The notes under the pieces: model-generated
What the model was told of the DNA's origin: nothing
The model's input: only the letters and a program-made list of their open reading frames with translations
Database searches by the model: none
Position numbers and translations under genes: made by a program
From: Bugula neritina
Lineage: Eukaryota; Animalia; Bryozoa
Length of the DNA: 64,000 nt
Direction of reading: 5' to 3'
Assembly: GCA_964035545.1 (NCBI GenBank)
Contig: OZ037770.1
Coordinates: 4,000,662-4,064,661 of the forward strand
Part shown: positions 15,737 through 59,774 of the stretch, piece by piece
How positions within the stretch are numbered: the stretch's first letter is position 1
Layout of the letters: every line of letters starts with the position of its first letter

Positions 15737-16282
15737 GGTAGTAGTAGTAGTGGTAGTGGTAGTGGTAGTGGTAGTGGTAGTGGTAGTGGTAGTGGTAGTG
15801 GTAGTGGTAGTGGTAGTGGTAGTGGTAGTGGTAGTGGTAGTGGTAGTGGTAGTGGTAGTGGTAGTGGTAGTGGTAGTGGTAGTGGTAGTGGTAGTGGTAG
15901 TGGTAGTGGTAGTGGTAGTGGTAGTGGTAGTGGTAGTGGTAGTGGTAGTGGTAGTGGTAGTGGTAGTGGTAGTGGTAGTGGTAGTGGTAGTGGTAGTGGT
16001 AGTGGTAGTGGTAGTGGTAGTGGTAGTGGTAGTGGTAGTGGTAGTGGTAGTGGTAGTGGTAGTGGTAGTGGTAGTGGTAGTGGTAGTGGTAGTGGTAGTG
16101 GTAGTGGTAGTGGTAGTGGCAGTGGTAGTGGTAGTAGCAGTGGTAGTGGCAGTGGTAGTGGCAGTGGTAGTGGCAGTGGTAGTAGCAGTGGTAGTAGCAG
16201 TGGTAGTAGCAGTGGTAGTAGCAGTGGTATAGTAGCAGTGGTAGTAGCAATGGTAGTAGCAATGGTAGTAGCAGTGGTAGTA
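15737..16282. repeat. (GTAGTG)n hexamer array grading into GCAGTG/GTAGCA variants
   Basis: Direct inspection; source of the poly-V, poly-LP and poly-HY ORFs. Confidence 0.97.
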
Positions 16283-25959: not shown

Positions 25960-27480
25960 ATAGCATGTCTCTGATGACAACTTAACGTACTTTCTTGAGC
26001 TCTGAGTTGGACGAGGTTAAAGTTTTTACTGTCCAATCTAGTTTTTATATAGGTAGATTATTTCTACACAAAAGAAAGGTTGTGTCTATAGGCGGGCCAA
26101 AATGACTTTGGCAAATTCTTTGCCAACGATGCTGAGCAGTAAGATAAATGCTTGTTTAGTTGTTGAGACCTTTTTTGTCTCTCTCATTCTTGTAAAGTTT
26201 GGTGATGTTTGCATCTCTCATGTCTTGTGGCACAGCACTTTCTTCCCAGCATTGACAAAGAACTTTATGGAGGGAATGATATTCCATCACTGCCAGGCGT
26301 CTTGCCCTGGGACAAACTATCAATGGTAATTCATAGTAGTTTCATCATCATCAATAGTGGACATGCTTTCAACTGCATCAAGAGCAGAGTGAGAGTTTAG
26401 GTGGGTCTAGTGTTCCACCCATCTCTCCATCTGCTTTCCTTTTTTGGTGATGAATTCCCCAGCGGAAGATTTGAGAGAAGGCATCTTGCTCTGGATTGGT
26501 TCCATTGCCATCTTGATGCCATCATACATTGCTCTAATGCTCTGAGCTGTTACTACATGGCTCTACCATACTCAAGAAGTTGTTCTTCACTACAAAGCCT
26601 ATTCTCCATACATTCTTGGCTGATTTGAACTCCTTTCCGCCAGTAAAATGTGTAGTTATTTCCCTTTAGATTGCCAAAATAAGCTAATCACATTTCTTAA
26701 AGGGTAGGAAAGTCTACGCTTATTCTCTTGAATTCATAGTTTATGATGGCTGGTTTTCGGGTGTCTCTGATGTCCAGTAAATTGATGGATAGACCGGTTA
26801 GTATAGTAAGAATGTTCCAACATCTCAATTTACGACCTGGTCTATTAGAGTCAGTTTTTTGTTGCCTCGTAAAAAGATTGCAGTCTTCTGTTTGGTTGTA
26901 TCTATTTTCCCATGCAACGAAAAAGCAAGGCAGGCTATGGCAGAACAGCACCTAACTGGATGAGGGCTGCGCAGCTTATGGCGGGAGGGGTAGCTGTCTA
27001 GTGAAATCTAAAGATCTCTCTCACCGTTGAAAGAAACCCCTGCTGTCTTGCTCTACACCAATTGAGAGACAGCTTATAACTGGTATCTGCTGCTCCCAGT
27101 GTTGTGTCTACACAAAAGGCAAAGATAGAGTGTTCTTGTCAGTGAGATGATGTGCGAGTGTATACCTGGGCATTGATAATATGAAGGACAAGTTGCTGTC
27201 CATGTGGCATGTTCCTCCTCTCCACATCGCTAGCCTGTGTGAAGAAACAGCAGGGCTGTCACAGTTTGGCACCAGCGTCGTTGCAAAAGCTGCCAGAATA
27301 AGGTTTTAAATTATAACTACGAAATGCCTTCGGTTCTCCAACACCTGATTCATCCTTGGGGTTTAACCCCCAAGCTTTTTGTTTAGTTGATATTGCTGCA
27401 AGGCAGCAGAGGTTTGAGATCAGAATTTGCCTTCTCCTGAATGAGCTGCCTTCACAGACTAATGAACCCTATCTGCATAT
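25960..27480 (-). mobile_element. Decayed RTE-like LINE (5' UTR and APE endonuclease remnant)
   Basis: Minus strand LRCWNILTILTGLS..DIRDTRKPAIINYEFKRISVDF..GNLKGNNYTFYW is APE endonuclease-like with no ORF1 ahead; many stops. Confidence 0.7.
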
Positions 27481-29575
27481 AATGTCTGAATAGCATTCAG
27501 TAACGAATGATGTCATCATTTCATTAGCTCATTTGAGAACTGATTGATTTGCAGATGCAGATAAGAAAATCACAGATTTCATAACTATTATTTGTAGATA
27601 ATGGACTTGTTAGTTAAGTCACAGATTATTGAAGTGAAATTATACAGACTTGAAATAATAAAAGCTATTAAAAATTTTTACATAAATTATTTGAATGAAA
27701 TTTATTGATAATATGTAAAGAGCAATCTTTGATAGATATTAGCAAGCTACTGAAATTATGATAATAATGTTAGCATGGCAATTAGAACATGTGCTGAAAC
27801 AACATAGTCAGTGCTTAGTGTCACATCAAAATATAAATGATAATAAATTTGGCTAAGTAAAAACCGCCCCTACCATAAAACAAGTAGTGCTTTTTTAAAG
27901 TGCCACAACGGGCTAATCACGTCTCCTATTTCCCATGCACCCAATGAGGAAAGCAGACAGTGGCAAAAGAGCACGTAACTGGCTGAGAGCTGCCTAGCCT
28001 ATGGCGGGCAGCAGCTGTACAATAAAATCTAAAAGCCTCTCCCACCAATGGAAGCAACTCCTGGTGCCCTGCTCTATGCCAATCGAGCGACAGCTTACAA
28101 CCTGTATCTACTGTTCCCGATGTTGTATCTACACAGAAGGCAAAACTGAAGTGATCTCTCCAGTGAGAAAAAAATAATGGTGTGTGGGTGTATATTGGGC
28201 ATTGATCATATGGAGAACAGGCTGTCTGTAATTGATTGGAATGCCAGTGAAAAAAAAAAGTTAACCAATGTACCTATAATTAGAAAACCATTACATTAGT
28301 CATGTATATGTAGCTGTTTTGCTTTTATGGCTATGACAAATTTGCACACGAAAGTCAACATGATTTCCTCATGTGTATGATTTCACTATGACTAAGTTGT
28401 ATAAATAGTTTTTTACACCATCAGCTTCCTGAAATGATTCATTCATTGAAGTATATTTTACTCTCAGCTCTCATTCTATGCTACACTTTCAGTAAGCTAA
28501 CATGTAGCATAAACTGCAGAGTAACCTTTCACCTATGTTATGTTAAATTTTTGTTGCATTTAAATCATTTTGAATGGTGGTCTAACAAAGTAAGTATTGT
28601 TATTGTAGTGTTTTTGACAATTATTTATGGCATTTGTATTATATTTTTTAATATCAATTTTAATAATTTAGATGGTGTATACTGATTTTTATAGCAAGAT
28701 TTGTTCTTTACTTGAAGCTTATTAGTTAGTGTCAAATTATCACTGATAAAAGTTTTATCACATATTTTCATTCATTATGGCATATTCACAATTTCATTAT
28801 TTGTAGTTTTCACGACAGTTTTACCAATAAAACATCAGTAGAGACTGAAGACCACATTGTGCCTGTTTACAAACCAGGGATGATAGTTTACACTGTTTTT
28901 CATGTCATCCTTCTCCACGTCGCTGGCATATCCAACGGAAAAGCAGGGCTGCTATAACAGGGCGTTACAGTTCGGCACCAGCGCAGTCGCAGTAGCTGTC
29001 AGAATGAGGTTATAAATAACAACAAAATGCCTTCAGGGCTCCAACTCCTGATTTGTCCTTAGGGTTTACTCCCCAAGCCTCTTTCTTGATTGAGTATCGC
29101 CGCAAGGCAGAGAAAGTTTGAGATTGGAGTTTTCTTTCTTCGAAATGAGCTGTCTACACAGACTAATTAACCCTATTTGCGCAAAATGTCTCAATAGCAT
29201 TCAATAAAAAGTGATGTCATCATTTCATTAGCTCACTTGAGAAATGATTGGTTTGCGGATGCGGATAAGAAAATGACGAATTTGATGACTATTATTTGTA
29301 GATAATGGACTTGTTAGTTATAAGTCACAGATTATTGAAGTGAAATTTTACAGACTTGAAATAATAAAAGCAATTAAAAATTTTTACATAAATTATTTGA
29401 ATGAAATTTATTGATATAATATGTAAAGAGCAATCTTTGATATATACTAGCAAGCTACTGCAATTATAATAATAATGTTAGCATAGGCGTCAGAACATGT
29501 GCTGAAACAACATAGTCAGTGCTTAGTGTCACATGAAAATATAAATGAGAACAAATTTGGCTAAATAAAATCCAT
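27200..29575 (+). repeat. Local duplications: ~27200-27860 vs ~28900-29570, and ~26900-27190 vs ~27925-28220
   Basis: Long near-identical blocks, e.g. tgatgtcatcatttcattagctca...aaatttggctaa in both copies. Confidence 0.85.
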
Positions 29576-29978
29576 ATAAGCAGGATTGGTTAATGTTTAA
29601 CAAGTCATAAAATCAACTGCAACCATATTATACTAAATACTATAACATAGTAATCTATATAGGCAGAACACCCAAAATCACAAATGAACTGAATATATCA
29701 TTTCCGTAAAATGAAAGTACGGCATATATTTCATATAATATGATTATTCAATATGAGATGAAATAACAAGCTAATCTACAGAAGTAAATGTTATCAGTAT
29801 ATAGCTCTATACTCAAAATAAGATACAAAAGTTAAAATATTTGATAGATATTTTGACTGTCAAGTAATCATTACTTATTCACACAAACTCACTATCTGTT
29901 CAGAGTCAAGGGTCATGCAAATTTCTTTAAAAATTAAACGAAGCCTCCTGCAAATTGAAATTGGAGTTATGTACTGAG

Positions 29979-31914
29979 TTAAAAGTTGTCCTCTCTGCTA
30001 AACCCATCAAAGCCAGGAAACAGGTAAAGTCTTTTACGGGGAGGAAGAGTCTTCCAGATTACAACCAAATTTCTGCTTCTCTCTGAATCTTCATCTGCAT
30101 AGAGTTTCTTAACTAGTTTAGTCTGAACCTGTAGAGTAAGTAATGACTAGTAAAACGGTTCATCAATTCACTACTAAAAGTAATAAGGTACAGCTCTCAG
30201 CTGTTAGAATATACTTTAATAATTTTGAGTATAGTAAAACTTTTGGAGTTGTCCGTTACAGTCATGTCATTTGATAAAATGGACTAATTATTAGCAGACT
30301 ACAAGAACATATTAAAGGAGGAGAGAAACTATCAATATAATACTGAGCCATTATCCTAAAGAAATTGAAACAACACAGACTAAACTCTATAATTTAAACA
30401 AGTAAAGCATTGAATGACTTTCTCTTGTACTCAGAACAAATTAAATTGTTTCTTTCAAAAAACATGATAGTTTGAACATGGAGATGAAAGAGATGCCACG
30501 ATGAGGAATAGTTTTTGGCGTAAAAGTTAAAATAGCAAAAAACTTTTGAGCTTTTAATTTACCTGCTGAAAGATGGTGTAGAGATCACGGTGACAGGCAT
30601 GTTTGTAGATTGAAGATACTAGAGCTCTAATCATGGAAGATCCATACTCAGGATGTCTCTTTGATGCTATAATAATATTAAATGCAGCCAAAATCATGGT
30701 CTAGTCAGCCAAAGTATAAGATGTTTTAAGCTAAAGTGTAACACAATTTAAATCTCAAAGTTCTAGAAAACATTTTAGTCACCTCAGTTTAGAAGCTTAT
30801 CAAGTCAACAAGATTAAAACGCAAGAAAAAGGCAAAGAACAATTTTTAGATAGGTGACAAAGTACAACAGTTTAGAAATATCAGCCAATCACTGACTCTT
30901 ATTATACTTACAGCAGACATTACTCTTCAGAACAAGAAGATTATCAACATCCAGTCTTGTCATACATTCTTCTATTCTAGGTGCTGGTGGTGAGACAGGT
31001 CTGATGGGTCTTATTACGCTGGGTGTCTCAGGATATACAATATCATCATCATCAGATTCAGAGTGTGTAGAAGAGACAGCTTCAGTTTCCTCTTCTTGAG
31101 CTGCTGCAAGACCAGATCTGTCTGGATTCACATCAACGTTTGCTGTAAAAAAAACAAACGCATTTAAACTTGCACCGTGATGAGTGAAAAAGAAATTTGA
31201 TCAGTACAGGAAAAGCTTTTCAAAGGTCTCTGTATTGTTTTCACTACTTGACTAAAAATGAAAGTTTCCTATACAAAAATGTAATTACTTCCACTGCAAG
31301 CTTCTAGGATAACAACTGTAGGTTTAGGCTTCAGACTCAAAGGAGCAAGAAAATCATACAAGTCTGTAAGGTTGACCTTCTCAAGGTCAGTTCCATAGAT
31401 ACAGTTATCTTCTTCACCATGACTCATGACAACCAGTATTTGACAACCCAAGCCATTGTTTTTCTCTCCTCTTATCTCAGACTTCACAGCAGACAGCATT
31501 TCCTACAAATTTGAAAATAACTATGTTTAATAATTGATACAAAATTATGATAAATGAATAAAATAATAATTTCCGAACCTGCAAAAAAAATTGTGACCAG
31601 CAGCAAACACCCCGCTTTGGGTTTTCTATACAGTCTTAATTTTCGAGCAATTATAAACTGAACAGTTACAGTCCATCATTGTGTAAATTTTTGAGGTTTG
31701 ATGATTAAGTAGTGCTCGTATTACCTTCACCATAACAACATACCTCTGCTGTCAGGTCTGTGTGTGTCTCAACATCAAACTTGAGAGATTTCAACATGAC
31801 AGACATGTTCTCAACATCAGCATCTGAACCTTCCCTGCATAAGTCTGGTCTTTCAACAAAGTTCTTATTGTTTATTATCAGAGCTCTTCCTCTCTCTCTG
31901 GTCATACTGAACAC
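29979..31914 (-). CDS. Caspase (peptidase C14A) domain exons of the ROCO-caspase gene
   Basis: Five exons encode p20 (His in VMSHG, Cys in LEACSG), an acidic linker and p10 ending LYLFPGFDGFSREDNF*. Confidence 0.92.
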
Positions 31915-34900
31915 CTGGATACAAATATTGTTAGAGTATTGCATACAGTAGTAACGTACAGGAGTAAAGTTATCCAGTATATGATGAAACACTTTAAAAA
32001 TAAATAGCTATTATGAAGTTAGATTTTAAAACTCTAAACTGGCCTCAAAGTTCTATGTCTTGTAAAACACTGGTCAAACAAACTTTTGTAACATTCATTT
32101 TACACCTCAGTTACTTTTTGTATTTTAACTTTTATATGTTTATTAGCTATTTGAGTAGCATAAACTATTGTATTACAGCAAATGATATTTTTAACAATGA
32201 AACATTCCATTGCATTTGGTAATCGTTCAAGCATAAGAAAATACTATTAAGGTATGGTTTAAAAACAAGAGTAGGCTGCAATTACATTGATTCCGATCAA
32301 TTGATAATAGGTTGCAATCAACCCTACATTTCTACAAATCAAGTATATAAATTGCATGGTAAAGCAATAGAAGTAAATAATGACGATTCTTGGCTATATT
32401 GACATGCCATATATTTTGACATTTAAAGTCTCATATATGCACTGAATTTCCAAAGCCAAACGTTGTTAACAAAGTGTCCACCAATTCTAAAGATACCATC
32501 AGATGCAACAGAAAAAATTATGGTAGAAGTACAGAGAAGTTTAAAGGTTTCAGGAAAAAACGACATTATTAAATATTTGCCCCACTAGAATTACTCAACA
32601 AAGACTGCTGGGCAATGTTAACACTACATCCCATTCACTTCTTCAAAACACCTCTGACCTCTCTACCTCTCCTCTTTATTTACACCTGGCTTTTTATCTC
32701 TCTCGGAAAACTACTTATGCTACTCCTACTCTTCTCAAAAACCCAAAATAAGTCATAGAAATTTACAAGCAGGTGCACAAACCAGTACACCAAAGTAGCT
32801 AAAAATCACAAAACTATATATACATCCTAATTTGCATGTGACAACAGATTGAACCTTAACCAAACAGACACACCACAAAAACTAAAATGGCTAAAAATTA
32901 AGAGTTAACTGATGTAAACTGAAAAATTGCCTTCAGACTGTTGCAGTGGCTTTTTGGCAGCTTTCCAAAAATAATTGTGTAACGAAAGCTATTTGTGAAA
33001 ACTTTCGCGATAGCTATTTACTGACAGTTTTTGATCGATGAGTCAGTGTAGCTCAATTTTCCTCCTGCTAAAGATGCAGGCAATCTATACTTAATTGTCA
33101 AAATAATTGTAAGTATCAAGTAAAACGTATATTATCTTCTGTTTTGAACTTCATTAACTAAATGTTTTGTCAGCTATGTAATTAATGTTAAGTTAACAAT
33201 GTTTGTAATTTTTAGGGTTATAAGTTACAGTAAAGTATAAGTACAGTATGAGTACAATTATGAGTATATATGAGTTTAAGTATGAATGAAGTCTAACTTA
33301 AAAAATATACTGTATGCAATAGACAAAAATAGAGTTGTGGCTTGCATCTGTGTCCTCCATTCGTTCACCCTTCATTAAATGAACCATAATACATAGGCAT
33401 CTGTGCCAAACAGCACCCGTGCTGACGTAGCAACAATTATCAGCTGATACAGTAACCACTATCGAATCGGCTGTCACACAGACTGATCTTTTTCTAGAAG
33501 TAGTTCAACTACTAGACATGTTTATCTAGTAAAGAGAGTCTATAGACATAATATATTCATCAACTGATACATTCACCTTGTCAGTATCCGAGAACAGCTG
33601 CTTTATCTTTGGGTTGGTGGTTGGCTTCAATTCAAGTTGTATTAACTTCAGGCCTTCTTCATTTTTTCCATCAGGGTACAGATTGTCATCATTTTCAGAG
33701 AGATCACTCTGATCATCAGCTAACATTTCTAGACAGTCATTCAAACAATTGATTTTTGTCATCATTTGAAAACTATACAGTTAAAATTTTGCTTAATCAT
33801 TAACAGCAAAAAGCAATGGATTACAATGGACGCATGCATAAAAAAGCTTTTAGATATCTACATGTATGGCAAGCTTTGCAAAACAAGGAGTTTTATCAAA
33901 TGGTGGCTGTACACATAGGTCATTTTACTTAATTTAGTACACACTGGAAATCTCCAGTTTTTAGCTATTTTTTACAATTTAGCTGCTAATGAACATGGGT
34001 TTTGCCCAAAAGTAGTAAAGCCTAAATGAACACACCTAAAAAATCAAGGTTCCTCTAAATTTTGCTTGATTTGTCATGTTTTTTTCTAATTATTCAGCTA
34101 CTTTTGATTTCAGAGAGTTATGGTTTTTTCATGACGGCCTGCAGTCAAAAGTAGCTGAATAATTAAGAAAAAACATGGGAAATCAAGCAAAATTAAGAAG
34201 AACCTTGATTATTTAGGTGTGTTCATGACACAGGTCATACTCCTGTACTAACTTAAGTAAAATGACCCACATCAAGTTCTATCTAAAAAATTTACCAGTT
34301 GAATTGTTTTGATCTCCTCGCAGTTTGAGCTCAGCAACTAGCTTCTTCAACTTATTTGATTCTGTTTCTGACAATTTCTCACCTGAATAAAACAAATAAG
34401 ATTAGCATTTCTAAACTTTAAAGAATTTAAGTTACGAGATACTGACATGTGAATAGGAGCTTATGCTTTTAAGTTGCCATTTTATAATTAAGACAAAATA
34501 TTCAACTAATTGCTCAAAATTTTTACTAAAAGTTTTTTTGCAACACAAAGTAGTAAATATTTATTTGTTGAAACAATTATTGAAAATATTTCTGTTGAAA
34601 TTCAATTTTATGAGTGAACATACATGGGTGGATTAAAGCGCTAGGGACCTCCTCTTCATTACATAACATTTTTGAAGATCCATCACATTTCTTGACATTA
34701 GGTGGCAGCAGGTTTTTTAAGGATCGAAGACACCATTTGGGGTGAAGGACTTCTTTAGGACAGGAAACCCCCAGTAGCAAGCAGTGAGCACAAATGCAGG
34801 TAGTGACTGGTCGACTAGCAGTCCAAGTCTCCATAACATGTCTGAGGATGTTGTTGTTGACCGAAATGAGATTCTCCCACATTCTGGAAATGTTGGACGC

Positions 34901-37900
34901 ATCAGATGAAACATAAAGTAAAACTCTTCTCAATGCGTAATCGTGTACCAGTCTTGTGTATATTTCATCTTGATAGACATTAGCACCATTCTTCTTCACT
35001 TCCATTGTGGCAAAATCTTTAGAAAACATTTCTAATAAACCAACCGTCATCTGATGGTAGACATGCTGTGGTAATGCCAGACCATTAAACTGTGTCTCGG
35101 TATGAAGCAGTAGCTCTTTTGGTGGAGTGTAGAGGAGGCTGTAAGATTCTTTGGCAAACTGAGGGATTATGAAGTAAGAATCATCAGATTCATCATTCCT
35201 AGGGCCATACAACAAACGGAACGTGCTGAGCAAACAAAGCCCAATTTCAACATCACCCGGATTTCTAAATAAAGTTTCCTGAGCTATCAGATATTCAAAA
35301 AGGGATTGCATCATTAGGCCAGTTGCTTGGAAGTAGTTCACAGAGTCTTCAAAGTCTTGCTTCTCAATTCTCACTCCTCTTGAAAAATATGGTTTGAACT
35401 GATCTACTCTGCTCTGCCATATGTCTGGATCATGGTGATACAAAACACACAGCAGTTTAGTAACTTCTGTGATCTTGTGAAATATGTATGGCCTGAGCGC
35501 ATCAACATTCTTATACCAGAGAACCTTTCCGCAATCATGCATGTACATGAGAATGGTATCCAATTGGTTTCTATCAATGTCATCCCGTTCTTTCTTTATC
35601 TCTGCCAGGATTTCATCAAAAGTGTTGTGTGCAGACTGCAAGAACAACACTTTTGTGTTGACATCTTCCCAGACTTTTGGAAGGAGTTTGATGAAGTGTT
35701 GGCAACTTTGAAGGAAAGATTTTTTAATCGATTCGAATATCTTGTACTCATCAACTTTTCCAATTTCATAGATACTTCCATTTTCAAAGATTTTTCCATT
35801 TGATTCAGTGAAATGTTGAATTCGAGCAAAGTCACCTTCTAAACTTTTCTCATCTTCAAGAATATTTTTGCAAAACTGCTCAGACACTTCAAAAAAATTT
35901 CTTTGAAGCTGTTGAAACTTTTCTTTCTGAAACTTATCTTTGTGCGTGAAGACAAGCTCAGGCGGGCCAAGAGATGGATGAGCGAGATAGAGGTGAGACA
36001 TGAAATCAAAGGCCAGCTTTCTTACAGCCTCTTCATCTGTAGACTCATTCGACATCTGATCATACTGCTCCATGTTGACTACAATGACCGGTACGCAATT
36101 CTGTCTCAGTGTTAAATGGTATGTGATATGGTAGACCTCCTGGCCTCCCATATCTATGAGACGAAGAGTTGTACCATCCACCTCTACCTCTTCCACATTA
36201 AACACCTTTGTGGTCTCATCATGCTCTACATTTGAACTTCTGTCAGTCAAAACTCTTTTTTTGTCAGTGCTCTGTAAATTTCGAATTAGACTGGTTTTAC
36301 CTGCCATGGTGTTCCCCAACACTGCTATTGTCGCAAATGGAAGATTTCTACCAGTACCCTTAGCCAAATCTGTGTAGTATTGTCGCACAGCATCTAATCC
36401 TTTTTTACAGACTTCTAGTGGAGGAGATGTAAGAGAATCGCAATCATTTATATCCAGTGTATGGAGGCGTGTTAGCTGTAGTATCTCAGGTTTCAAGGAT
36501 GTCATGGAACTGTTTTTGGATATATTCAGTATGTGCAGATTACTCAATGCACACACCGGAGATGGTAGATTGGTGAATTTATTGGAAGATATGTCTAGTG
36601 TCTGTAACTTTTGTAGATTCTGTATCCTAATAATATATTATATTCATATTATCAGCACATACTAGAGGTAAGTGAGATCTAATTATAGCTGTCATAAATC
36701 TACAATGATAGTAAAGCAATTATACACAGAATGCAGACGTATGAAAATGACAATGACTACAGTGACTTTCTTGTATCAAACCTTTTAAAGTAGCATGGGA
36801 TTTAATTGTAATTCTAGAATTTTAATTTATTGGTATTCTCACAATTATCAAGTGTTTTTTGATATTCTGAAGTATTTACAACACTACAACTACAATTAAT
36901 TGATAAAAGATATTAAAGAAGTATTTTACTGTCATAATTCATAATGCTTCCATAAACAATGTTGTTTTATATAACATGTAGTTGAGTATAACTGTTTACA
37001 CTGATATTTTATTTTAGTAATATATACTATATATTTATACTCCATATATAAAGGGAACAGCCGTGGTCTAAGGGCTAAAGCATTCGATTTGTGAACACGG
37101 AGTCAGGGGTTCGAACCCCGACAAAAGCCATTGGTGATGTTAAGAAGAGCATCCAGTCATAATTGCTCCTGTGTCTCATTTGAACAAGTCCTTAGCCCAT
37201 TCTAACAAAAACTCTTTCCATCAGGCGTTTTCTCACAAGGATAGCGACTAAAAACTTGCGTGAGTTTTTATATATACTATATATGGGTCATTTTACTTAA
37301 TTTAGTACACACCGGAAGTTTCCAGTTTTTAGCTATTTTTCACAATTTAGCTGCTAATGAACAAAGGTTTTTGCCCAAAACTAGTTAAATGTTAATCAAC
37401 ACACATAAATAATCGAGGTTCTTATTAATTTTGATTGATTTTCCATGTTTTTTCCTAATTATTTAGCTACTTTTGATTGCAGACCGTTATGGTTTTTTCG
37501 TAACGGTCTGCAATCAAAAGTAGCTGAATAATTAGGAAAAAACATGGAAAATCAATCAAAATTAGGAAGAACCTTGATTATTTAGATGTATTTATTGAAA
37601 TTTTATTAGTTTTGAGCAAAAACCCTTGTTCATTAGCAGCTGAATTGTGAAAAATAGCTAAAAACTGGAAATTTCCAGTGTGTACTAAATTAAGTAAAAT
37701 GACCCATATAATATACAGTTATAATCAAACTAGATAGAGACAAAGTTATCATGTATGAGTCTGCATGAAGTATTACAGAAAGTAGGTCAGGGAAGAACAT
37801 AATACTCTTCTGTATATTCTAGTAAAAAATATTAAGAAATACACTTTTTGAACAGAAAGTTCAAGTTTTGATCAACTTTGCTACAATATGATGAAATACA

Positions 37901-40900
37901 AGTTTAGGGTACCATTGCACTATATTGCAGGGATATTACGTGTGCATTCTTTAAAAGATAGTTTTGTAATTTATAAAGGAAAGTGAATTATTGAACGTAT
38001 TATAGATATGAACAACTTGTTATGTATACACCATTTCTAGCTTTACAGAGGAGAGGTATGAACACCGTAATGTAGTTCAACTGTGTTGACTATTTTGCTA
38101 AAAAATGTTTTAAATGGTAACTCTATTGTGACACACAAACCTCTCAGGTAGAGTAGATAATCTACAGTTCCTCATATCCGCCTCTTTAAGTGATGTGAGT
38201 GATGATACAACTTCTGGTACTGTGTTGAGAGGATTCCCTCCTATGTCTAGTTTCTCTAACTGAGTCAGCTGACATAGACTGTATTATGAAGTGTATGATA
38301 TATATGTAGTCTGCATTACTATAATATTTTATACTATATTCAAATTTTCTTTTCAACAAGGTAAAACTATATACAACTTAACTACCAAGCAACTTATTGT
38401 AGCATTGTACATGCAGAGCATATTAGAAGTTAACATTTTATTATAATAGTATACAAGTATTCAATTATTATATATATTCAGTGTGTGAATACTAATAAAC
38501 TATACAACTGATGACTATTATTTACATTTTATAGCACAAGAATATATAATGGCATACCTTAAAATTTCGTTATTTTTCGTTATTTTCACAACAAACCATA
38601 TTTCATATAGAATTCAAAAAAATTGCTTTTCACATATTTTTTCAATTATATAATGACATGACCTAGTTCTACTTGGTAAGGAACTATTTTATGATTTCAA
38701 GTATTAAATGTTTCAAACAACACAAAAACCGTGACAAACAAACCTCTCAGGTAGAGTAGATAATTTACAGTCTCTCATATTCAACTCTTTAAGTGATGTG
38801 AGTGATGACACAACTTCTGGTACTGTGTGAAGAGGGTTCCTTCTTATGTCTAGCTTCTCTAACTGAATCAGCTGACATAGACTATAAACATGCAGTGTTA
38901 GATGTATTTAGTTTCACTTATACAGAGTACAATTACTAGAGTTGAGATAGCTACCATATACTACCAAATTATACTATCAATTTATTCATTCATAACAGAT
39001 CTATATATAAAGTACCATATACTATCATAACGCTTGACTACTAGATAAAAGTAGAACAGTTTATTATAATAGTACACAAGTATTTATTTTCAAACTCACT
39101 GAATACAATATAATAAACTAGAAATTATTGCTTACTATTAATTACATTTTTATAGCACAACAATATATAATGGCATATAACTTTAAAATTGTGTTATTCC
39201 CACAATATTATAAACCATTGCATATATATGTGTGTAACTTCAAAACATTGCATTTCATAATTTTCAATTATACAATGGCATACCATAATAACACTTGGTA
39301 TAAGCATAATTATAAAGATGTCAAATATAGAATGTTTAAAACAATACAAACGTTCTGACACACAAACCTCTCAGGTAGATTAGATAATCCACAGCTCCAC
39401 ATATCCAACTCTTTAAGTAATGTGAGTGATGTTACAACTTTCAGTACTCTTATAAAAGGATTCAATCCTATACGTATAGTTTTTCTAGGTGGGTCAGCTG
39501 ACATAGACTGTAATATAAAGTATATGATATATACTTAGTCTGCATTGTGAGATGATCCAATGTTGACAAGCAACAAGCTAGCAGGTACTAAAGCTACTGA
39601 CAAGTGATAGCCGAAGGAAAGCCAATGCAAAACACTTTGGAGCTAGAGCTTAGCCTGGAAGGTTAATATTACATGCATTACTATAATATTTTATACTGTA
39701 TTCACATTTGGTTTTCAACCAGGTAAAATTATATACAACTTAGCTACCAAGCAACTTGATATTACAGCACAGTACATGCAAAGCATGAAAAAATATCAGT
39801 TCATTATAATAGTGTAAAAAAATTAAATTATTATACTCAGTGAATGCTAATAAACTAGAAATTTTGGCTTACTATTCACTAAATTTTATAGAGCAAGAAT
39901 ATATAATGGCCTACCTTAAAATTATGTTATTTTCACCATATTACAAACCACTACATATATATCAATTCCTTTAAAAAAGTGCATTTCATGTTACAGAGCC
40001 TGAGAAGTTAACAGTTTAATATAATAGTATACAAGTATTCAATTATTATTATATATACTAAGCTAGTAAATACTAAGCACCTATACAACTGCTTACTATA
40101 TATTATTGACATTTTATAGCACAAGAATATATAATGGCATACCTTAAATTTTGTTATTCTCACAATATTACAGATGATATTTCATATAGAATTCAAAAAA
40201 TTTGCATTTCCCATATTTTTCAATTATATAATGACATGCCCTAATTATACTTGGTAAGAAACTCTTTTATGATTTCAAGTATTAAATGTTTCAAACAATA
40301 CAAAACTGTGACAAACAAACCTCTTATGTAGAGTAAATATTTTACAGCTCCTCATATTCAACTCTTTAAGTGATGTGAGTGATGACACAACTTCTGGTAC
40401 TGTCTTAAGAGGATTCCAACCTATGTCTAGTTTCTCTAACTGAGTCAGCTGACACAGACTGTAATATAAAGTGTGTATTATATGTATTCTACTGTATCAT
40501 ATAATGACATATTGTAATGGATTTTAGATTATGTTATTATCGAAAGGATAACTCTTTGTGGCTTACTCTCTATACGCTGGGCATAATGGCTATAAGTACT
40601 GGAGATCAATTATCATAATAGCTGACAATTGGAATGCGTACAATCTACTGGACAATTATTGCTAGCTACTAATGCACGCAGTTAAACAAGGCAAGACTAG
40701 TTAAATGGAATCAACAACTGTAGGAGGCGTAGATGGTTTGCACTGGCAGTTAGCTGCTTAGTAGCAGATGCTAGTGTTATGCTTATGGTGATGGAGTTAA
40801 TTGGTATTGACAGAGACGACTCGGCGTAGACTGTTATCCGACAATATCTTACAGTCGACAGTGGCACCACTAAGGCTAGCCAATCAGGACAGTCACACTA

Positions 40901-42038
40901 ATTGATAGCAGGTGGAGCTAGCTACTCATAGTTGCAGTGCGCTGAGTAGCTAGCCGGCAGAGCAGCTTGGGACTTCATTTAGAGTAGTTGTGTATTAAAG
41001 CTCACTAATTATGTAATCGTTTTCTATTCATGCTAGCAGTAAATAACCTTCTTGTATTTGTGTAAATAATAAAGTTATCTTAGCGTAAACAACCTGGTGC
41101 AGTGGCTTTGATTAAGTCGACCCACACATAATAATAGTGAACTGGCAAAATTCACTACAATATTCTGTACTCAGTTATAATGTAAATTATTTAGCAAACA
41201 ATTTTGTTGAGACAGGGTACAGAAAAAAATGCTATTACGTCATGTTATGGGTGTAATGGGTGCCCTGTGTAGAATTGAGTGATTAGGTGTGTTTGTATAT
41301 AGACATCGTGTTAGTTTAATAAATAAGGGTTACTCTACAATGTAATGCTAATATATAGTATGATTTATAATAATAAATGGTTTAATTTGTTATAGCTAAT
41401 CTGACACAAATTAGCATGTATTTAATATTCTGAAAATATTTTATTTTTAGGTATATGGCTACATATAATATGCTTATATATATTATGTGTTGCAAATATA
41501 AACCTTCTGTATAATCCTACATGTATACATGTACTACAATAATAATATGTTACTTCTGCATTCAACTACATAAAACATGTTTTAATTGATGATGGCATGT
41601 GTAACGCTACAGACAGTTTCCCACTGTCTAGTTTCTACAACTCAATCAACTGGCAGAGATACAATGTTATACATATATTACTATAGCTTTATATTGTGCA
41701 TGATTACATCATGAGTAAAAGTATACTTCAGCATTGACTTAGATACATACATCGTGGGTGATAAATATCACAACTAAACTCATTTACACAGCTATCATAA
41801 TAGACACTCACTTGTCTATACTTGTTCTGTCAGTCAGGTTAGAAACACGTAGACACAGGGCTTCACCAGCAATCTCTCCAATGTTGTTTGGAATATTCCC
41901 TTTCAGTTTAAGATCTGTGATATCATAACTCCCAACTTCATGTTTCACCTCAGCAGTAGTATATGACTTGGTATTAGCTTTCTATACATCCCACCAGTCT
42001 ACAGGAGGCTGACCAGAATGTCTGAACCAGATTCTCAT
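29979..42038 (-). CDS. ROCO-caspase fusion: LRRs, Roc GTPase, COR and peptidase C14 (p20+p10); 5' end uncertain or damaged
   Basis: Exons in transcript order: ~42043-41812 (in-frame TAG), 40458-40321, [39507-39368 frameshifted], 38881-38744, 38278-38141, 36626-34624, 34382-34296, 33728(or 33719)-33577, 31914-31744, 31502-31289, 31142-30912, 30666-30563, 30128-29979 (TAA). All GT-AG with matching phases. Roc motifs GNTMAGKTS, DMGGQ, THKD; COR-like PKVWEDV..YMHDCGKVLWY; caspase RGRALIINN, REGSDAD, MSHG, EACSG, SKRHPEYGS, KRLYLFPG. Confidence 0.85.
33917..34268. mobile_element. Foldback MITE, internally deleted copy of 37285-37705
   Basis: Termini ggtcattttacttaa / ttaagtaaaatgacc and an internal palindromic core. 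Confidence 0.8.
34624..36626 (-). CDS. 2003-bp exon: last LRRs with cap, Roc GTPase, COR region
   Basis: ORF 34577-36556 extended to the acceptor at 36627-36628; SPPLEVCKKGLDAVRQY cap typical of ROCO/MFHAS1-type proteins. Confidence 0.92.
37053..37265 (+). mobile_element. tRNA-derived SINE (best-preserved copy)
   Basis: A-box tggtctaaggg, B-box ggttcgaacccc; family copies at 24299 and 61840. Confidence 0.75.
37285..37705. mobile_element. Foldback MITE, almost wholly palindromic (~210-bp arms)
   Basis: gggtcattttacttaatttagtacacac... / ...gtgtgtactaaattaagtaaaatgaccc, flanked by atat on both sides. Confidence 0.9.
38141..40458 (-). repeat. Tandem array of LRR exon + intron units (exons 38141-38278, 38744-38881, 39368-39507, 40321-40458)
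   Basis: Each intact exon is 138 bp, consensus LCQLTQLEKLDIxxNPLxTVPEVVSSLTSLKELxMxxCxLSTLPE; the introns are also homologous. Confidence 0.93.
39546..39673. mobile_element. 128-bp TG...CA insertion with TGCAT TSD (short solo LTR-like)
   Basis: tgcat at 39541-39545 and 39674-39678; the paralogous intron near 38311 has the empty site ctgcattactataat. Confidence 0.75.
40513..41159. mobile_element. Solo LTR, 647 bp
   Basis: TGTA...TACA termini, ATAT at 40509-40512 and 41160-41163, internal AATAAA near 41067. Confidence 0.75.
41504..41659 (-). pseudogene. Degenerate LRR pseudo-exon
   Basis: Minus strand LCQLIEL*KLD resembles the cassette start; no AG at the expected acceptor. Confidence 0.55.
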
Positions 42039-43099
42039 ATTCTCTGTAACATCATACAGTGACAGTGTAATTATTACACAGTGCTAGCAGGTGATGTCTG
42101 TCATTCTGAAACCTGTCACATAATTATAACTATTATTTGCTGTGTGTCAGACACTATAGCTATATGTAGACATGTCTGGCTACTTTAGGTTTATGAAAGT
42201 AAAATTTGCAAATTTAAAATGATATCTAATTCCCTGAAAACAACTGCTTTGTGTAGAATCTTTGAAATTATGCCGCTTCGGTTCCAATAAAGATCTTTTT
42301 AAATAATGTTAGCATATATTTAACCTTATATAAATATATTAAATCATTTTAAAATCATATGAATTTAAAGCAGCCAAAATAACGCTGAATTATTATTTCA
42401 TATCCATGCATGCACAAAAAACTACAAATAGCAACACTAAGTAAAAACTTTCTATATCTGACACTGCATACTTCCTACCCTATGAGTCACACAGGAGAAA
42501 TGTGGACTAGTATGTAGCTAGAACACTTTCTGATAGTGAAATATATAGACCTGATTATTTGAATGTTACTCATATATTTACTATGGAAACAAGCAAACCA
42601 CCATAGAAAAGTTTTTGAAAACTCTTGTCCCAGTAGGTAAAACTTTTACTAGTCTTGCTAAAATGAGATTCATACTAATGCAGAGCTGACTTTGTTGAAA
42701 CCTACATTTAAATAAATGCTAAGTATTGTCTAAATACAAATAGTAACAACCAGTAGATAACTTTTGTTAAAAGCAAAAATTGTAACTTGGCTTTTCATTA
42801 GAAAGTTATCAAAACAACTCACCATCTGTTACTATGGTTACCAAAGATTTTACTGCTGATTTATTTCAATTCTGTATATCTAAAGGTAGGCAGCCCCATC
42901 TGTACAACAGGTTTAAAATAAAGAGGTATTATGATATAAACCATTGCTGATTTCAATTATATCAATGAACTTGCCAATTCCTATCAAGATGAGATGTATA
43001 ATCAGTCAAGATAGATAAACTAATCAACTCTCGAAACGCATGTGTATATGTTTATATATATGTGTGTATATATATACTTTGGTAAATTATAGGTCTGTA

Positions 43100-52633: not shown

Positions 52634-52939
52634 TGTTATGTTTTTCAGATTTAGGGTTGATGTGCCACCAAGAGAGTCTATTTATCACTAGAGAAACTGC
52701 ACCGAGTTAAGTCGAGTAGATATCGTTATATTTTAATACAAGAATACATAATAAAATCTAATGTACAACAGTAATGATACGCACGTCTATTTAATTTACA
52801 GCACTATCCTCAACTGAGCTAGTAGCGCGAAGCTGCTACTATTACTCATAAAACAGCCTAGCTAATTGGCTAATACATTGTTCCGGGTCAATACGCAACC
52901 TTGCGTATTGTGTTGCTGGTAGCTCCACGAGCCACCACA
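52634..52939 (-). repeat. 3' LTR (306 bp)
   Basis: Matches 59775-60078. Confidence 0.97.
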
Positions 52940-53208
52940 CTGCCCCCTCCAGCAGAAAGCCCTCTTTCTGATAAAATAAAATTCACATAAAAAAAACGTA
53001 TACTTCGTTGGGGAGAGGGGAAGAGAACAGTATAAAAGTATATACAAAAAAACAACAACTGATAAAATATACAGGTATATATAACGTGCACAATATGTAA
53101 TAAGTAAGAGAAGGTCCTATCTACATGTAGAGTACGTGCCACCATAACGGTAGGGAATGCCACAGAGAGGTAGGGGAAGAGTAGTATGGAGTTGGAGATA
53201 GACTCAAG

Positions 53209-54282
53209 TTAACTGCGGGCCGCACGCTTCATGCGTTTAATAGACTCCTGTAAATATTTGAGTTCACTGGATGCAGCCTGCACCCGTGGGGCCAGTCTGT
53301 ACACTTCTTGCTCCAAGTCGTGTGCTCTAGCTTCTACTTCACGTAGGTTGCGGGCCCAGGGGGACGAGCGAGAGGAAGTCGGCTGTCTGTGTCTTTTCCG
53401 CTCTGAGGATGGAAGGGGAGGAGGGAGTGTATACGCATTTGTGTCTACTCTCTGTAGTACGACACGAGGAAAGGTATGCGGTATGCGTAGAGGACTGTGA
53501 GGTGGAGAGTTAGTAGACTGTGTAGGTTTATCTGCGGCTCCAGAGATGATGGGTCGCGGGGAAGGGAAGTCTTGCTCCAGGCGAGATAGCCGAGCTGAGT
53601 CAGTGATGAGTGGTTTGATGGCGTCGAGAAAGGCAGGATAGGATGATTCGTCTACTTCATAGACATGCCCTTGATAACACTGCATAGTACGTTGGTGCCG
53701 CAGTAGGTAATCACGATTGTAGCTATATTCTCCGCAAGGGCAGAAAGTGATGATGTAGTGTTGCGGCAAGTGTACTTTCAGTCTGCGGTGGGTTGTGAAT
53801 CGCTGCTGGCAGAGGTTGCATTCACGATTACTCTCACCTCCTTGATGGGTCCTAATCTCTCTCTCTGTGGCAGGGGTAATCCAGTTGGAGGTTGCTTCCA
53901 ACTGGGGTGGCAGTTGCCTTGTTGTAGAAGTTGTTGGGGCCGGCTCTGGGTCCCACGCCATCTCTAGAGAAGGCATGCCCGGAGAGACGGGCGCGAGTGT
54001 GTCTACAAAAGTAGAATTATTGTTAGATCGCGGTGGATCTTTACAACATAATTCTAGTGACTGTCGACCGTTGCTAGCCTGAGAGTCACAGCTTTTGGAA
54101 TGCACTCGAGGAACCGATGAATCATGTGTGGACTGACCAAGAACAGTGTCTAGCTCCAGGTCTAACAGACCGTCGGCCATTACAGTGTCTTCATCGTCAT
54201 TCACATGAAACGTGGTTCCCAGTAATTCTGATTCAATCTGCTGAATTAGTTCAGAATTTACTGGCATCGAGCCCGTTTCCAT
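53209..54282 (-). CDS. Retroelement ORF3, 357 aa: low-complexity N-terminus, C2H2-type zinc finger(s), C-terminal coiled coil
   Basis: CNLCQQRFTTHRRLKVHLPQH, then FCPCGEYSYNRDYLLRHQRTMQC; heptad-like LREVEARAHDLEQEVYRL..LKYLQESIKRM. Confidence 0.8.
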   Translation of the reverse strand: METGSMPVNSELIQQIESELLGTTFHVNDDEDTVMADGLLDLELDTVLGQSTHDSSVPRVHSKSCDSQASNGRQSLELCCKDPPRSNNNSTFVDTLAPVSPGMPSLEMAWDPEPAPTTSTTRQLPPQLEATSNWITPATEREIRTHQGGESNRECNLCQQRFTTHRRLKVHLPQHYIITFCPCGEYSYNRDYLLRHQRTMQCYQGHVYEVDESSYPAFLDAIKPLITDSARLSRLEQDFPSPRPIISGAADKPTQSTNSPPHSPLRIPHTFPRVVLQRVDTNAYTLPPPLPSSERKRHRQPTSSRSSPWARNLREVEARAHDLEQEVYRLAPRVQAASSELKYLQESIKRMKRAARS

Positions 54283-57200
54283 GAATAGGAATACAAGACT
54301 CGTACTGGCTTACCTGGGAACTCGGTATTAATGTCCATACTCAACGTTCTTGGTAAGATTGGAGCTGGTTGTGAGATACGTCTGCCTTTGGCGATGTCAG
54401 CGTAAGAAAAGGCTGAGCATCGTTTCTGAGGCACGAGGTCGGAACTATTTGCTTTACGCGCATTAATTCCTCCCACTATTCCGCCCTCGCAAAAGTTGAT
54501 ATTTGCGTGGGGTTCACAACTCCAACATTTTATCGTACGGTTTTCCCCTAGACTTTCATGTGCGCCGCTTCTAATGCAGTCACATACGAAGTCTTTTAAA
54601 TATAGTGGGGGTTTCCTCGTACGCTGTCCCCTTTCTAGGGGGGGTGACACGCTTGCCGGTTCGTTAGTAGGGGCCTCTAATGGCGTCTCTACTTCACCGT
54701 TAGCGGTCACCTCTTCTTGTTCTCCGGATGGAGCCCCTCCCTCCGTGGGGGTTTGCACTTCCGGAACCGGCTCGGTTTCTGGAAGTGATGGAATTAGACT
54801 TGGCGGTGGCGGACACGCTTCTGTTGACAAAAGCTGCCGCTCCTCTCTCACCAAGTTTTCTTCCCGCGGTATGACCACTTCGTATTCAGGTCCATGCCGC
54901 CGTCGCCCGCGCGTCGTTGTCTGCCTCCTGGGCTCTAACAACGGGGGGGCTTCTCCCACTCCGTCGGGGCTAGCCCAATACGGTTTCAAGCGAGACTTAT
55001 TCTGGATAGACACCTGTCCTGAGCGCTCGATCTTGTACGTGTGATTGGGCATAGCCTCGACGACCACGTAGGGGCCTACAAACTTAGGCTTCAGCTTATC
55101 AGCCTGTCCGCGACGCCTACGGTAATTGACCATCCACACCTTATCTCCCGTTTGATAGAGAGGTGGTTCATCGGAATCTTCGTGCCGCACCTTCCACTGC
55201 TGTTGGCGCAGTATATCGTGTGCGGCCTTCATCCATTCCACTAGTTCACTGGCATACTCGTGAACCGACTTGTCTTGCTCTGGAACGTGATAGGTGAGAT
55301 GGTCAGGGACACGAGTCTCTCTCCCGAGCATCAAGAGGTTTGGGGTCTCACCAGTACTGGTGTGTGGGGTGCTGCGGTAGGCACGCATGACTTGCGGCAA
55401 CACCGTATCCCATTCCTCTTGACCTCGTCCAAGGAGGAGACTCCGGAGTGCATCACCCAGCATCCGGTTGTTGCGTTCCACCACCCCGTTACCTTGAGGG
55501 TGGTAGGGGGTGGTCCTGCTCTGATTTACTCCCCAGAAGTGGCAAAGGTCGCTCATCAGTTAAGACTGGAATTGAGCGCTTTGATCAGAGTGTATCTGTT
55601 CGGGAAGCCCAAAATAACAGAATACATGTTGGTCTAGTGTCCTGGCCACTGTTGGGGCTGATGCATCTGGGATAGCCAGAGCATCCGCCCACCGAGTAAA
55701 GTGGTCGGTTAGTACTAGGATCCAATTATTGCCTCTGGGGGTCAGGGGCATGGGTCCGACCAGGTCTACAGCGACTACTTGCCAGGGCCTACCAGCATAT
55801 AGCCTCCGCCTTCCTGCTTCACCAGGGGGGCGGCTATGCTTACTGGCCTGGCAGATATCACACTGTTTGACTCTGAGCCGGACGTCACGCTCTATTTGTG
55901 GCCAATACCACCGGAGTCGTAATTTGGATATCACTCTCTTGACCCCTGCGTGGGCCTGTTTGTGAGTATCCCAAATCAACTCACGGCGGATGGCCGTGGG
56001 GCAAACTACCCTCTTCCTTTCCGGGTGTCTGCCGCTGGCAGCTAGGGAGATGGTGAGTAACCCATCCTGCCCGATCCGCAGCGAGTCCCAACGCTGACAG
56101 TATAGCCGGAACTCGGCGCATCCCTGTCGTATGCGTTCTTCGCTGGGTCGTCGCCCTTCCCTTTTGGCCCGGTATATGTCTGCCACGACTCCAGGCAGCT
56201 CTTCTTGGAGCTTCTTCAGCTCTCGAACATTACCGGCCAGTACAGGGTTGGCGCGTAGGTTTTGTACATCCTCCGGGGACTCATTAACTCTTTGCCTGAG
56301 TTGACCTTGGTCCCAGTCAAACGGTGCTCCGTGATGAGCCAACGTCTCCAACTCGCATCGCGGGGGACCTCCATCCCTCCTCTCGATGTGGAGACACTGT
56401 TTGCAACCTCCGTCAGGTCGGCGACTCAACCCATCCGCATTGCTGTGTCTCTTGCCCGGTCGATGTTCGATCCGGTATGAGAATTCAGCTAGGATTTCGA
56501 GCCACCGGGCGACCTGACTAGAGGGCTCTGCTCTCTTGCACAACCAGATCAGCGAGGCATGATCCGTACGCAGCCGGAACTTCCTGCCGTATAGGTATGG
56601 TCTGAAGTGCTTCACTGACTTGATTACTGCCAGCAGCTCCTTGCGGGTAGTGCAGTAATTTCGTTCAGCGGGTGAGAGAGACTTGCTGTAGTAGGCTACT
56701 ACTACCTCTCGGCCTTCCTCCACTTGTGACAGCACAGCGCCAACATTTTGGTCACTGGCGTCCGTGTCGAGGATGTACTCCAGAGTGGGGTCTGGGTAGG
56801 CCAAGATGGGCGCCGTTAGTAGGCAGCCCTTGAGGCGGTCGAACGCTTCCTGTTCGACTGGGGTCCACTGCCACGTCACTCCCTTTGCGGTGAGCCGGTT
56901 TAACGGCTGGGCTATGCCCGCAAAGTCCGGTATGTATTGCCTGTAATACCCTACCAGCCCCAAGAAAGCCCGGAGTCCGGTCAAGTCTTGGGGGGTGACC
57001 CAGTCTTCTACTGCCCGTACCTTTTCGGGATCCGTTGCCACGCCGTTTCGACCGACAACGTGCCCCAGGTACTTGACCTCCGGCTGCAATAGAGCGCACT
57101 TGGAAGGCTTGAGCTTAAGACCGGCACCTCGGAGTCTCTCGAAAACCTCCTGCAGACGACTGACATGTGTCTCGAAGTCTGGAGAGATTACGATGACATC

Positions 57201-59773: not shown

Positions 59774-59774
59774 C

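What the first reader, a model, noticed from the sequence alone, without database searches (positions are those of the whole stretch)
29979..40458. LRR-Roc-COR-caspase: a ROCO GTPase fused in frame to a caspase
Seen: the ORF track shows a ROCO ORF and scattered caspase pieces. GT-AG exons 36626-34624 (ends phase 1), 34382-34296 (1/1), 33728-33577 (1/0) and 31914-31744 (0/0) link them with no stop, and the frame continues to TAA at 29979. I see no CARD/DED prodomain or separate start before the caspase. Established: animal ROCO proteins usually carry a kinase (LRRK), a death domain (DAPK1) or no C-terminal effector (MFHAS1); Roc-COR modules dimerise in a nucleotide-dependent way; initiator caspases are activated by dimerisation. 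Inference: a one-chain sensor-switch-executioner in which LRR ligand binding drives Roc-COR dimerisation and caspase activation, an NLR/inflammasome analogue built on a GTPase. I know no characterised protein with this architecture but cannot search to confirm novelty.
Basis: partly seen in the sequence, partly recalled or inferred. Interest (0 to 1): 0.93.

Follow-up and report, generated by a model that had tools for sequence, protein, structure and literature searches.

The report
Bryozoan ROCO GTPase fused to caspase
This moss-animal gene joins a leucine-rich-repeat sensor, an LRRK2-type GTPase switch and a cell-death protease (caspase) in one reading frame; the design recurs in amphioxus and bacteria but I found no functional test of it, and this copy looks damaged at its front end.

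Summary
The fusion is real. All junctions from the Roc-COR exon to TAA 29979 are AG/GT, in phase and stop-free. A close paralogue keeps the exon order and splice sites (dN/dS 0.24). RNA contigs of paralogues join the linker exon to the caspase, and Watersipora RefSeq proteins carry LRR-Roc-COR-caspase in one chain with matching exon borders. The host is probably Bugula neritina. The scan found this family before on other DNA of this genome.

Novelty is lower than claimed. LRR+AP-GTPase+COR+caspase is listed for bacteria (Kaur 2021), and amphioxus 'LRRs-caspase' genes were reported in 2008. I find amphioxus LRR-Roc-COR-caspase proteins whose sisters carry GT4, OTU or Death domains instead. Trees weakly favour separate fusions (AU p 0.046). 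I found no paper on the bryozoan family and no functional test.

One LRR cassette is frameshifted, an upstream coding exon has an in-frame TAG, and the caspase motif is EACSG (Gln283 to Glu) with His, Cys and both S1 arginines kept.

Best reading: a family of one-chain immune or cell-death receptors in which COR dimerisation activates the caspase. This is inferred. This copy may be truncated or a decoy.

The parts
41812..42043 (-). Probable N-terminal coding exon (acceptor approximate) with an in-frame TAG at 41984-41982
   Evidence: Read with X at the stop it matches W. subatra P0153 residues 45-121, E 5e-5 in a local set; GT donor after 41812
41581..41660 (-). Decayed part of an LRR cassette with an in-frame TAG (borders approximate)
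   Evidence: 80% identity over 35 nt to the cassettes; translation
40321..40458 (-). LRR cassette exon a, 138 nt, phase 2/2, two LRRs; holds the first in-frame ATG after the upstream stop (40355)
39368..39507 (-). LRR cassette exon b, 140 nt, frameshifted with 5 stops; must be skipped for an open frame
38744..38881 (-). LRR cassette exon c, 138 nt, phase 2/2
38141..38278 (-). LRR cassette exon d, 138 nt, phase 2/2
34624..36626 (-). Large exon, 667 codons: last LRRs, Roc (P-loop 36316-36290, switch I Thr 36217-36200, DxxG 36154-36140, THKD 35947-35936), COR-A and COR-B, CxHC motif 34792-34781
   Evidence: Pfam; model pLDDT 93.6 matching LRRK1, C. tepidum Roco and LRRK2; positions
34296..34382 (-). 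Linker exon 1: helix that follows COR
   Evidence: 96% identical in paralogue L003; the equivalent helix follows COR without an intron in relative L010
33577..33728 (-). Linker exon 2: acidic disordered spacer and the pre-caspase segment
   Evidence: Matches W. subatra linkers, E 2e-4; spliced to caspase exon 1 in an RNA contig of a paralogue
31744..31914 (-). Caspase exon 1 (large subunit start; Arg179 equivalent in REGSD at 31836)
   Evidence: Peptidase_C14 E 1e-10
31289..31502 (-). Caspase exon 2: catalytic His (SHG 31424-31416) and Cys (EACSG 31304-31290)
   Evidence: joint 31501/31743 in all four RNA runs
30912..31142 (-). Caspase exon 3: acidic intersubunit linker and start of the small subunit
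   Evidence: joint 30666/30912 in RNA run X5
30563..30666 (-). Caspase exon 4: small subunit with the Arg341 equivalent (SKRHP 30664-30650)
   Evidence: 61% identity to W. subatra P0048
29979..30128 (-). Caspase exon 5 and stop codon TAA (29981-29979)

Best explanation
The locus is one member of an expanded bryozoan family of single-chain LRR-Roc-COR-caspase genes. Shown: one reading frame links the LRR cassettes, a complete Roc-COR module, a flexible linker of about 80 residues and a full two-subunit caspase with no death-fold prodomain. Inferred: the variable LRR array binds a foreign or damage ligand and shifts the Roc nucleotide cycle toward the dimeric state. By analogy with C. tepidum Roco that state is GDP-bound or nucleotide-free. 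COR-B dimerisation then brings the two tethered caspases together, as a CARD/DED platform does for initiator caspases, and they self-cleave in the acidic linkers and start cell death or immune signalling. This particular copy is intact over 1,175 codons from LRR cassette a to the stop but appears damaged upstream, so it may make only an N-truncated protein or none.
For: Exon phases and no stops. Paralogue L003 keeps exon order and splice sites with dN/dS 0.24 over 355 codons. RNA contigs join linker exon 2 to caspase exon 1 in frame, and two contigs stop matching exactly at 34622 and run on for 125-128 letters. W. subatra RefSeq proteins XP_067947674.1 and XP_067948342.1 and about ten more carry Roc-COR and caspase in one chain, with matching exon borders in the gene of the second. 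Same-contig linkage in other metagenome loci. Complete Roc-COR fold and only a helix plus disordered linker before the caspase. Amphioxus and Lingula ROCOs carry caspase, Death, CARD, GT4, OTU or trypsin domains at the same position. The COR C-terminal half drives Roco dimerisation (PMC6337361).
Against: No ligand, GTPase, dimerisation or cleavage data exist for any member that I found. The RNA contigs come from paralogues or other individuals, and the joints 34624/34382 and 34296/33728 were not among the rows displayed. This copy has an upstream in-frame TAG, a frameshifted cassette and Glu for Gln283. Unchecked notes say both neighbouring paralogues have lost the catalytic Cys. LRRK2 data show that Roc-COR oligomer state and output are not simply coupled (PMC6337361).
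Confidence: 0.6

Rival explanations
1. This copy, or its local subfamily, is a decoy or regulator. The caspase domain is weak or changed in specificity (EACSG) and acts as a dimer partner that tunes active paralogues, as cFLIP does for caspase-8.
For: Gln283 is one of three S1-pocket residues (PMC2064784) and is Glu here, while all W. subatra and amphioxus fused caspases that I checked keep QAC. First-stage notes report EASSG in the paralogues on both sides (unchecked). Caspase exon 1 is still under purifying selection.
Against: His, Cys and both S1 arginines are kept. EACSG recurs in loci L017 and L020 from other samples, so it may be a tolerated variant.
Confidence: 0.2
2. This copy is a young pseudogene of a real family. 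The stop in the N-terminal exon killed it recently and the rest has not yet decayed. This can hold together with the best explanation for the family.
For: In-frame TAG at 41984-41982 in an exon homologous to W. subatra N-termini; a decayed LRR piece with TAG; frameshifted cassette b; no clean start codon found upstream. RNA contigs differ from the window at many fixed places. A related locus, L004, has frame breaks in its large exon.
Against: No lesion in 1,175 codons downstream. Dead cassettes are expected where symmetric exons turn over and can be skipped. An in-frame ATG with A at -3 lies at 40355. The TAG could be allele-specific or an assembly error.
Confidence: 0.3
3. The family acts in development or colony turnover (polypide regression, metamorphosis, self/non-self contact) or as a GTP or membrane sensor, not in pathogen sensing.
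For: Roco proteins have been proposed as GTP sensors (PMC6337361). Two W. subatra members begin with MG-x-x-x-S, a possible myristoylation signal. Polypide regression in bryozoans is from my own knowledge.
Against: Tandem expansion, variable LRR cassettes and swappable effector domains are typical of immune receptor families (PMC8195603, PMC11378527).
Confidence: 0.12
4. Two adjacent genes: a ROCO gene ending at TAA 34577 and a caspase gene with its own start.
For: The large ORF reads on to TAA 34577, and this stop is kept in L003. In-frame ATGs lie at 33765 and 33726. Several W. subatra models lack a caspase. L010 and L012 keep an intron between linker and caspase.
Against: Two RNA contigs leave the genomic sequence at the 34624 donor. 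In L010 the COR runs straight into the linker-1 helix in one ORF. Annotated single-chain proteins exist in W. subatra and amphioxus. A caspase-less splice isoform remains possible.
Confidence: 0.05

Closest known systems
Bacterial LRR + AP-GTPase (Roc) + COR + effector conflict proteins (Kaur et al. 2021, PMC8195603)
   Same: [quoted passage not shown] OQX07365.1). Proposed counter-invader role.
   Different: Here the effector is an animal-type caspase with large and small subunits, the gene is spliced with LRR cassette exons, and the family is bryozoan. I did not test descent from the bacterial proteins.
Amphioxus 'LRRs-caspase' hybrid genes (Zhang et al. 2008, PMC2575513)
   Same: Receptor LRRs and a caspase in one chain, proposed as a shortcut from recognition to apoptosis. 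Branchiostoma proteins such as C3XQ16 are LRR-Roc-COR-caspase.
   Different: The paper names no Roc or GTPase, and I could not read its model ids (images), so identity with these proteins is likely but not shown. Roc-COR identity to this exon is about 20%, the motif is QACRG, and one clade with the bryozoan set is marginally rejected.
MFHAS1/MASL1 (LRR-Roc-COR)
   Same: Same N-terminal three modules; RefSeq names the W. subatra relatives 'MFHAS1 homolog'; shared CxxC at the end of COR.
   Different: MFHAS1 has no protease. Mollusc MFHAS1-like proteins form a separate clade.
Brown algal ROCO genes with shuffled LRR exons (PMC11378527)
   Same: Tandem symmetric phase-2 LRR exons before a large Roc-COR exon; candidate immune receptors.
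   Different: Algal exons are 72 bp with one LRR; these are 138 bp with two. The word caspase does not occur in that paper.
NLR inflammasomes and Apaf-1 apoptosome
   Same: Repeat sensor, nucleotide switch and caspase activation by proximity (analogy from established knowledge).
   Different: Those use a STAND ATPase ring and CARD/PYD adaptors with a separate caspase. This uses a GTPase dimer and a covalently tethered caspase.
LRRK1, LRRK2 and C. tepidum Roco
   Same: Best structural matches of the LRR-Roc-COR model.
   Different: Kinase output or no enzyme output.

Membership tests
ROCO proteins | Roc GTPase directly followed by COR | tested here: met
   Pfam Roc above cut-off and weak COR-A; model matches LRRK1, CtRoco and the COR domain 3dpt
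ROCO proteins | Intact G1-G4 motifs | tested here: met
   GNTMAGKTS, switch I Thr139, DMGGQ, THKD
ROCO proteins | Nucleotide-dependent monomer-dimer cycle through COR-B | not testable with these tools
   Only monomer models were made
MFHAS1 orthologues | Groups with MFHAS1-like proteins and lacks a C-terminal enzyme | tested here: not met
   Separate long-branch bryozoan clade; carries a caspase
Caspases (C14A) | His-Cys catalytic dyad | tested here: met
   SHG and EACSG
Caspases (C14A) | QACxG motif with Gln283 in the S1 pocket | tested here: not met
   This copy has Glu (GAA); most relatives keep Gln
Caspases (C14A) | Arg179 and Arg341 of the S1 pocket | tested here: met
   REGSD and SKRHP align with the Arg positions of relatives, and relative P0038 aligns with caspase-3
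Caspases (C14A) | Large and small subunits with an intersubunit linker | tested here: met
   Exons match both halves of W. subatra caspase domains; model of P0038
Caspases (C14A) | Cleavage after Asp | not testable with these tools
   Needs an enzyme assay
Initiator caspases | CARD or DED prodomain | tested here: not met
   No Pfam hit in the linker exons; one helix and disorder in the relative's model
NLR / STAND receptors | NACHT or NB-ARC ATPase | tested here: not met
   The nucleotide domain is a Ras-like Roc
Amphioxus LRR-Roc-COR-caspase | One clade in the Roc-COR tree | tested here: inconclusive
   Held together the tree is 20.4 lnL worse, AU p 0.046, quick tree with a long bryozoan stem
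Bacterial LRR-AP-GTPase-COR-effector systems | Domain order with a variable C-terminal effector | tested here: met
   Same order; effector variation seen in amphioxus and Lingula relatives, but only caspase in the bryozoan set
Exon-shuffling ROCO genes (brown algal type) | Symmetric phase-2 LRR exons | tested here: met
   138-nt phase 2/2 cassettes, 78-80% identical in protein
Exon-shuffling ROCO genes (brown algal type) | Alternative splicing and diversifying selection of the LRR exons | not tested

The most novel reading that the evidence does not exclude
Invertebrates have an overlooked class of intracellular immune receptors built on ROCO GTPases with swappable effectors, and bryozoans and amphioxus each arrived at a caspase output. 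In bryozoans it is a large family in which an LRR ligand switches COR dimerisation and directly fires a tethered caspase, with catalytically altered copies such as this one acting as regulators: a GTPase-based counterpart of the inflammasome.
Probability: 0.4. Interest if true: 0.88.

Novelty: new variant of a known kind. Interest (0 to 1): 0.64.

Why it matters
If the mechanism holds, animals have a third way to couple sensing to caspase activation, beside STAND ATPase platforms and death receptors, and it parallels a predicted bacterial defence design. A caspase is a simple readout of dimerisation. An intact family member would therefore let one test directly which nucleotide state of a Roc-COR module is the active dimer, which is an open question for LRRK2 in Parkinson's disease. 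The proteins sit in public databases under the label 'MFHAS1 homolog', so the family has been hidden by annotation.

Tried and rejected
The joined protein was never searched, aligned or folded; that step was left out, and W. subatra P0038 stood in for the full chain. Reads were laid once on 5,991 letters (29960-35950), so the LRR and 5' exons were not covered.

A metagenome scan with the N-terminal exon piece found no relative (one search was a frame slip, corrected), so the codon at the TAG in other alleles is unknown. An exact look-up of caspase exon 2 found nothing. Paper searches for Roc or COR with caspase in animals, and for bryozoan caspase expansions, gave only the two papers cited; most subscription journals are not searched. 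The supplement figures of Zhang 2008 are images, so their model ids could not be matched. The careful tree did not finish; quick trees were used, and rows labelled ENA, unk or bactq have unverified origin. No caspase-domain tree was built, because too few reference caspases were held. The ESM Atlas gave only leads below 0.9, the first a bacterial COR-CHAT cluster.

Rejected: a hidden death-fold domain in the linker; a chance chain of exons; MFHAS1 orthology; NLR membership.
Full report
Observation. On the minus strand the large exon 36626-34624 (667 codons) is followed by exons 34382-34296, 33728-33577, 31914-31744, 31502-31289, 31142-30912, 30666-30563 and 30128-29979. Each has an AG acceptor, each internal one has a GT donor, the phases chain correctly and no stop occurs before the final TAA. 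Intron stretches of the same lengths are jointly stop-free with probability near 1e-15, a rough figure that ignores the choice of splice sites. Pfam finds LRR, Roc and weak COR-A in the large exon and Peptidase_C14 in the first two caspase exons. Upstream lie three intact 138-nt phase-2 LRR cassette exons (40458-40321, 38881-38744, 38278-38141) and one of 140 nt that is frameshifted (39507-39368). The intact path is 1,175 codons.

Is it one gene? Four lines of evidence say yes. First, RNA-labelled contigs from four studies cover the exons and leave most introns thin. They come from many paralogues at 85-99% identity. All four runs show contigs that join linker exon 2 to caspase exon 1. One X5 contig has the exact 33577/31914 splice and reads KLFLNTDK-VFSMT in frame. 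Two contigs stop matching at 34622 and run on for 125-128 letters, as expected if the donor at 34624 is spliced to an exon that begins with GT. The joints 34624/34382 and 34296/33728 were not among the rows displayed, and no contig can be assigned to this exact copy. Second, a close paralogue (L003) keeps the order large exon, linker 1, linker 2, caspase 1, with the same splice sites and dN/dS 0.24 over 355 codons; the linker exons are as constrained as the rest. Third, Watersipora subatra RefSeq proteins of about 1,400 residues carry LRR, Roc-COR and caspase in one chain, and the gene of XP_067948342.1 has matching exon borders. Fourth, in a more distant relative (L010) the COR runs without an intron into the helix that linker exon 1 encodes here, so that helix belongs to the protein and TAA 34577 is intronic. 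L010 and L012 keep one phase-0 intron just before the caspase.

Host. The closest paralogue comes from a JGI sample whose records are labelled AY690838, the accession of the Bugula neritina mitochondrial genome, and its introns are 79-91% identical to the window. The window is therefore probably B. neritina or a close relative. Earlier notes of this scan report the same family elsewhere in this genome, with estimates of 50 to about 100 copies. I did not count copies myself.

Anatomy. The model of the large exon is confident (pLDDT 93.6) and matches LRRK1, C. tepidum Roco, LRRK2 and the isolated COR domain, so COR-A and COR-B are both present. G1 to G4 motifs are intact. Two cysteines of a CxHC motif at the end of COR are invariant in 78 sequences, which may mark a metal site (inference). 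A model of W. subatra P0038 from Roc to the end shows one helix after COR, a disordered stretch, the caspase large subunit, a disordered intersubunit linker and the small subunit, with no death-fold bundle. The caspase here keeps His, Cys, and the Arg179 and Arg341 equivalents but has Glu for Gln283. These three residues form the Asp-binding S1 pocket, and an acidic residue at 283 is typical of meta- and paracaspases (PMC2064784). W. subatra and amphioxus members keep QAC. EACSG also occurs in two other loci. Unchecked notes report EASSG, with no catalytic Cys, in the paralogues on both sides of this window.

State of this copy. An exon at about 42043-41812 matches the N-terminal region of W. 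subatra P0153 but has an in-frame TAG at 41984-41982, and a decayed LRR piece near 41650 also has a TAG. I found no open path from an upstream ATG; the first in-frame ATG after the stop is at 40355. The copy may be a young pseudogene, an N-truncated form, or an allele or assembly error. I could not decide.

Wider distribution. One hit, Branchiostoma floridae C3XQ16, is also LRR-Roc-COR-caspase. Searching with it found about a dozen such proteins in three Branchiostoma species. Their close sisters carry GT4, OTU or Death domains instead, more distant amphioxus ROCOs carry trypsin-like domains, and Lingula ROCOs end in CARD. In Roc-COR trees the bryozoan set is one long-stemmed clade, apart from mollusc MFHAS1-like, Lingula and amphioxus proteins, and amphioxus caspase-bearing copies are mixed with non-caspase ones. 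Holding the bryozoan and amphioxus groups together is marginally rejected (AU p 0.046). Separate fusions are favoured but not proven.

Literature. Kaur et al. 2021 (PMC8195603) describe bacterial LRR + AP-GTPase + COR proteins with at least 24 effectors including caspase. Their supplement lists the exact architecture in bacteria, and a sponge protein with AP-GTPase, COR, DED, TRADD-N and caspase. Zhang et al. 2008 (PMC2575513) reported amphioxus LRRs-caspase genes as possible direct links from recognition to apoptosis without naming a GTPase. Brown algal ROCO genes have shuffled phase-2 LRR exons (PMC11378527). I found no paper on the bryozoan family and no functional test of any Roc-COR-caspase protein.

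Mechanism. Shown: the single frame, the domains, conservation and expression of the family. Established: the C-terminal half of COR dimerises Roco proteins, and C. tepidum Roco is monomeric with GTP and dimeric when nucleotide-free, with an intermediate state on GDP (PMC6337361); initiator caspases are activated by proximity (general knowledge; also cited in PMC2575513). Inferred: ligand binding to the LRR array favours the dimer, which pairs the two caspases on their flexible tethers and triggers self-cleavage. I give this 0.6 for the family. Rivals are a decoy role for the EA[C/S]SG subfamily, a developmental or GTP-sensing role, and pseudogene status for this copy. Two separate genes are unlikely.

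Method note. The spliced model was searched exon by exon by reference; the joined protein was not searched, aligned or folded.

Verdict. The feature is real. It is a new variant of a known kind: the architecture is on record from computation in bacteria and in part in amphioxus, while the bryozoan family appears undescribed and untested. Interest 0.64.

Noticed in passing
window 52634-60078: Ty3/gypsy-type LTR retrotransposon: 306-nt LTRs 99.3% identical, TG...CA ends, ATAT target duplication; gag-pol on the minus strand is split into several ORFs (protease, RT, RNase H, integrase). A young insertion about 10 kb upstream of the gene.
   Followed up: partly
window 1-523 and 5694-6216: Inverted repeats of at least 523 nt, 90% identical, around GC-richer DNA; probably a DNA transposon cut by the window start.
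   Followed up: no
window 37280-37710 and 33915-34226: Palindromic MITE-like element in two introns of the gene; a related copy lies in the intron after linker exon 1 of paralogue L003, and it is very deep in RNA contigs.
   Followed up: no
window 34792-34781: CxHC motif at the end of COR with both cysteines invariant across bryozoan, amphioxus, Lingula and mollusc ROCOs; further conserved cysteines follow. A possible zinc site.
   Followed up: partly
L010 2460-2757 (also L012): Relative whose LRR-Roc-COR and caspase parts are each intronless, with a single phase-0 intron between them; either intron loss or a retained intron that would give a caspase-less form.
   Followed up: partly
proteins P0168-P0208 (Branchiostoma) and P0126, P0220, P0223, P0227 (Lingula): Animal ROCO families with swappable C-terminal domains (caspase, GT4 glycosyltransferase, OTU, Death, CARD), echoing the bacterial systems.
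   Followed up: partly
proteins P0153 and P0023 (W. subatra): N-termini MGAKSS and MGNGQS fit a myristoylation pattern, hinting at membrane targeting of some members.
   Followed up: no
window 27251-27865 and 28958-29573: Direct duplication of about 615 nt, 86% identical, just downstream of the gene.
   Followed up: no
window 15730-16281: Tandem array of a 12-nt unit (46 copies, 96% matches) that explains the spurious ORFs there.
   Followed up: no
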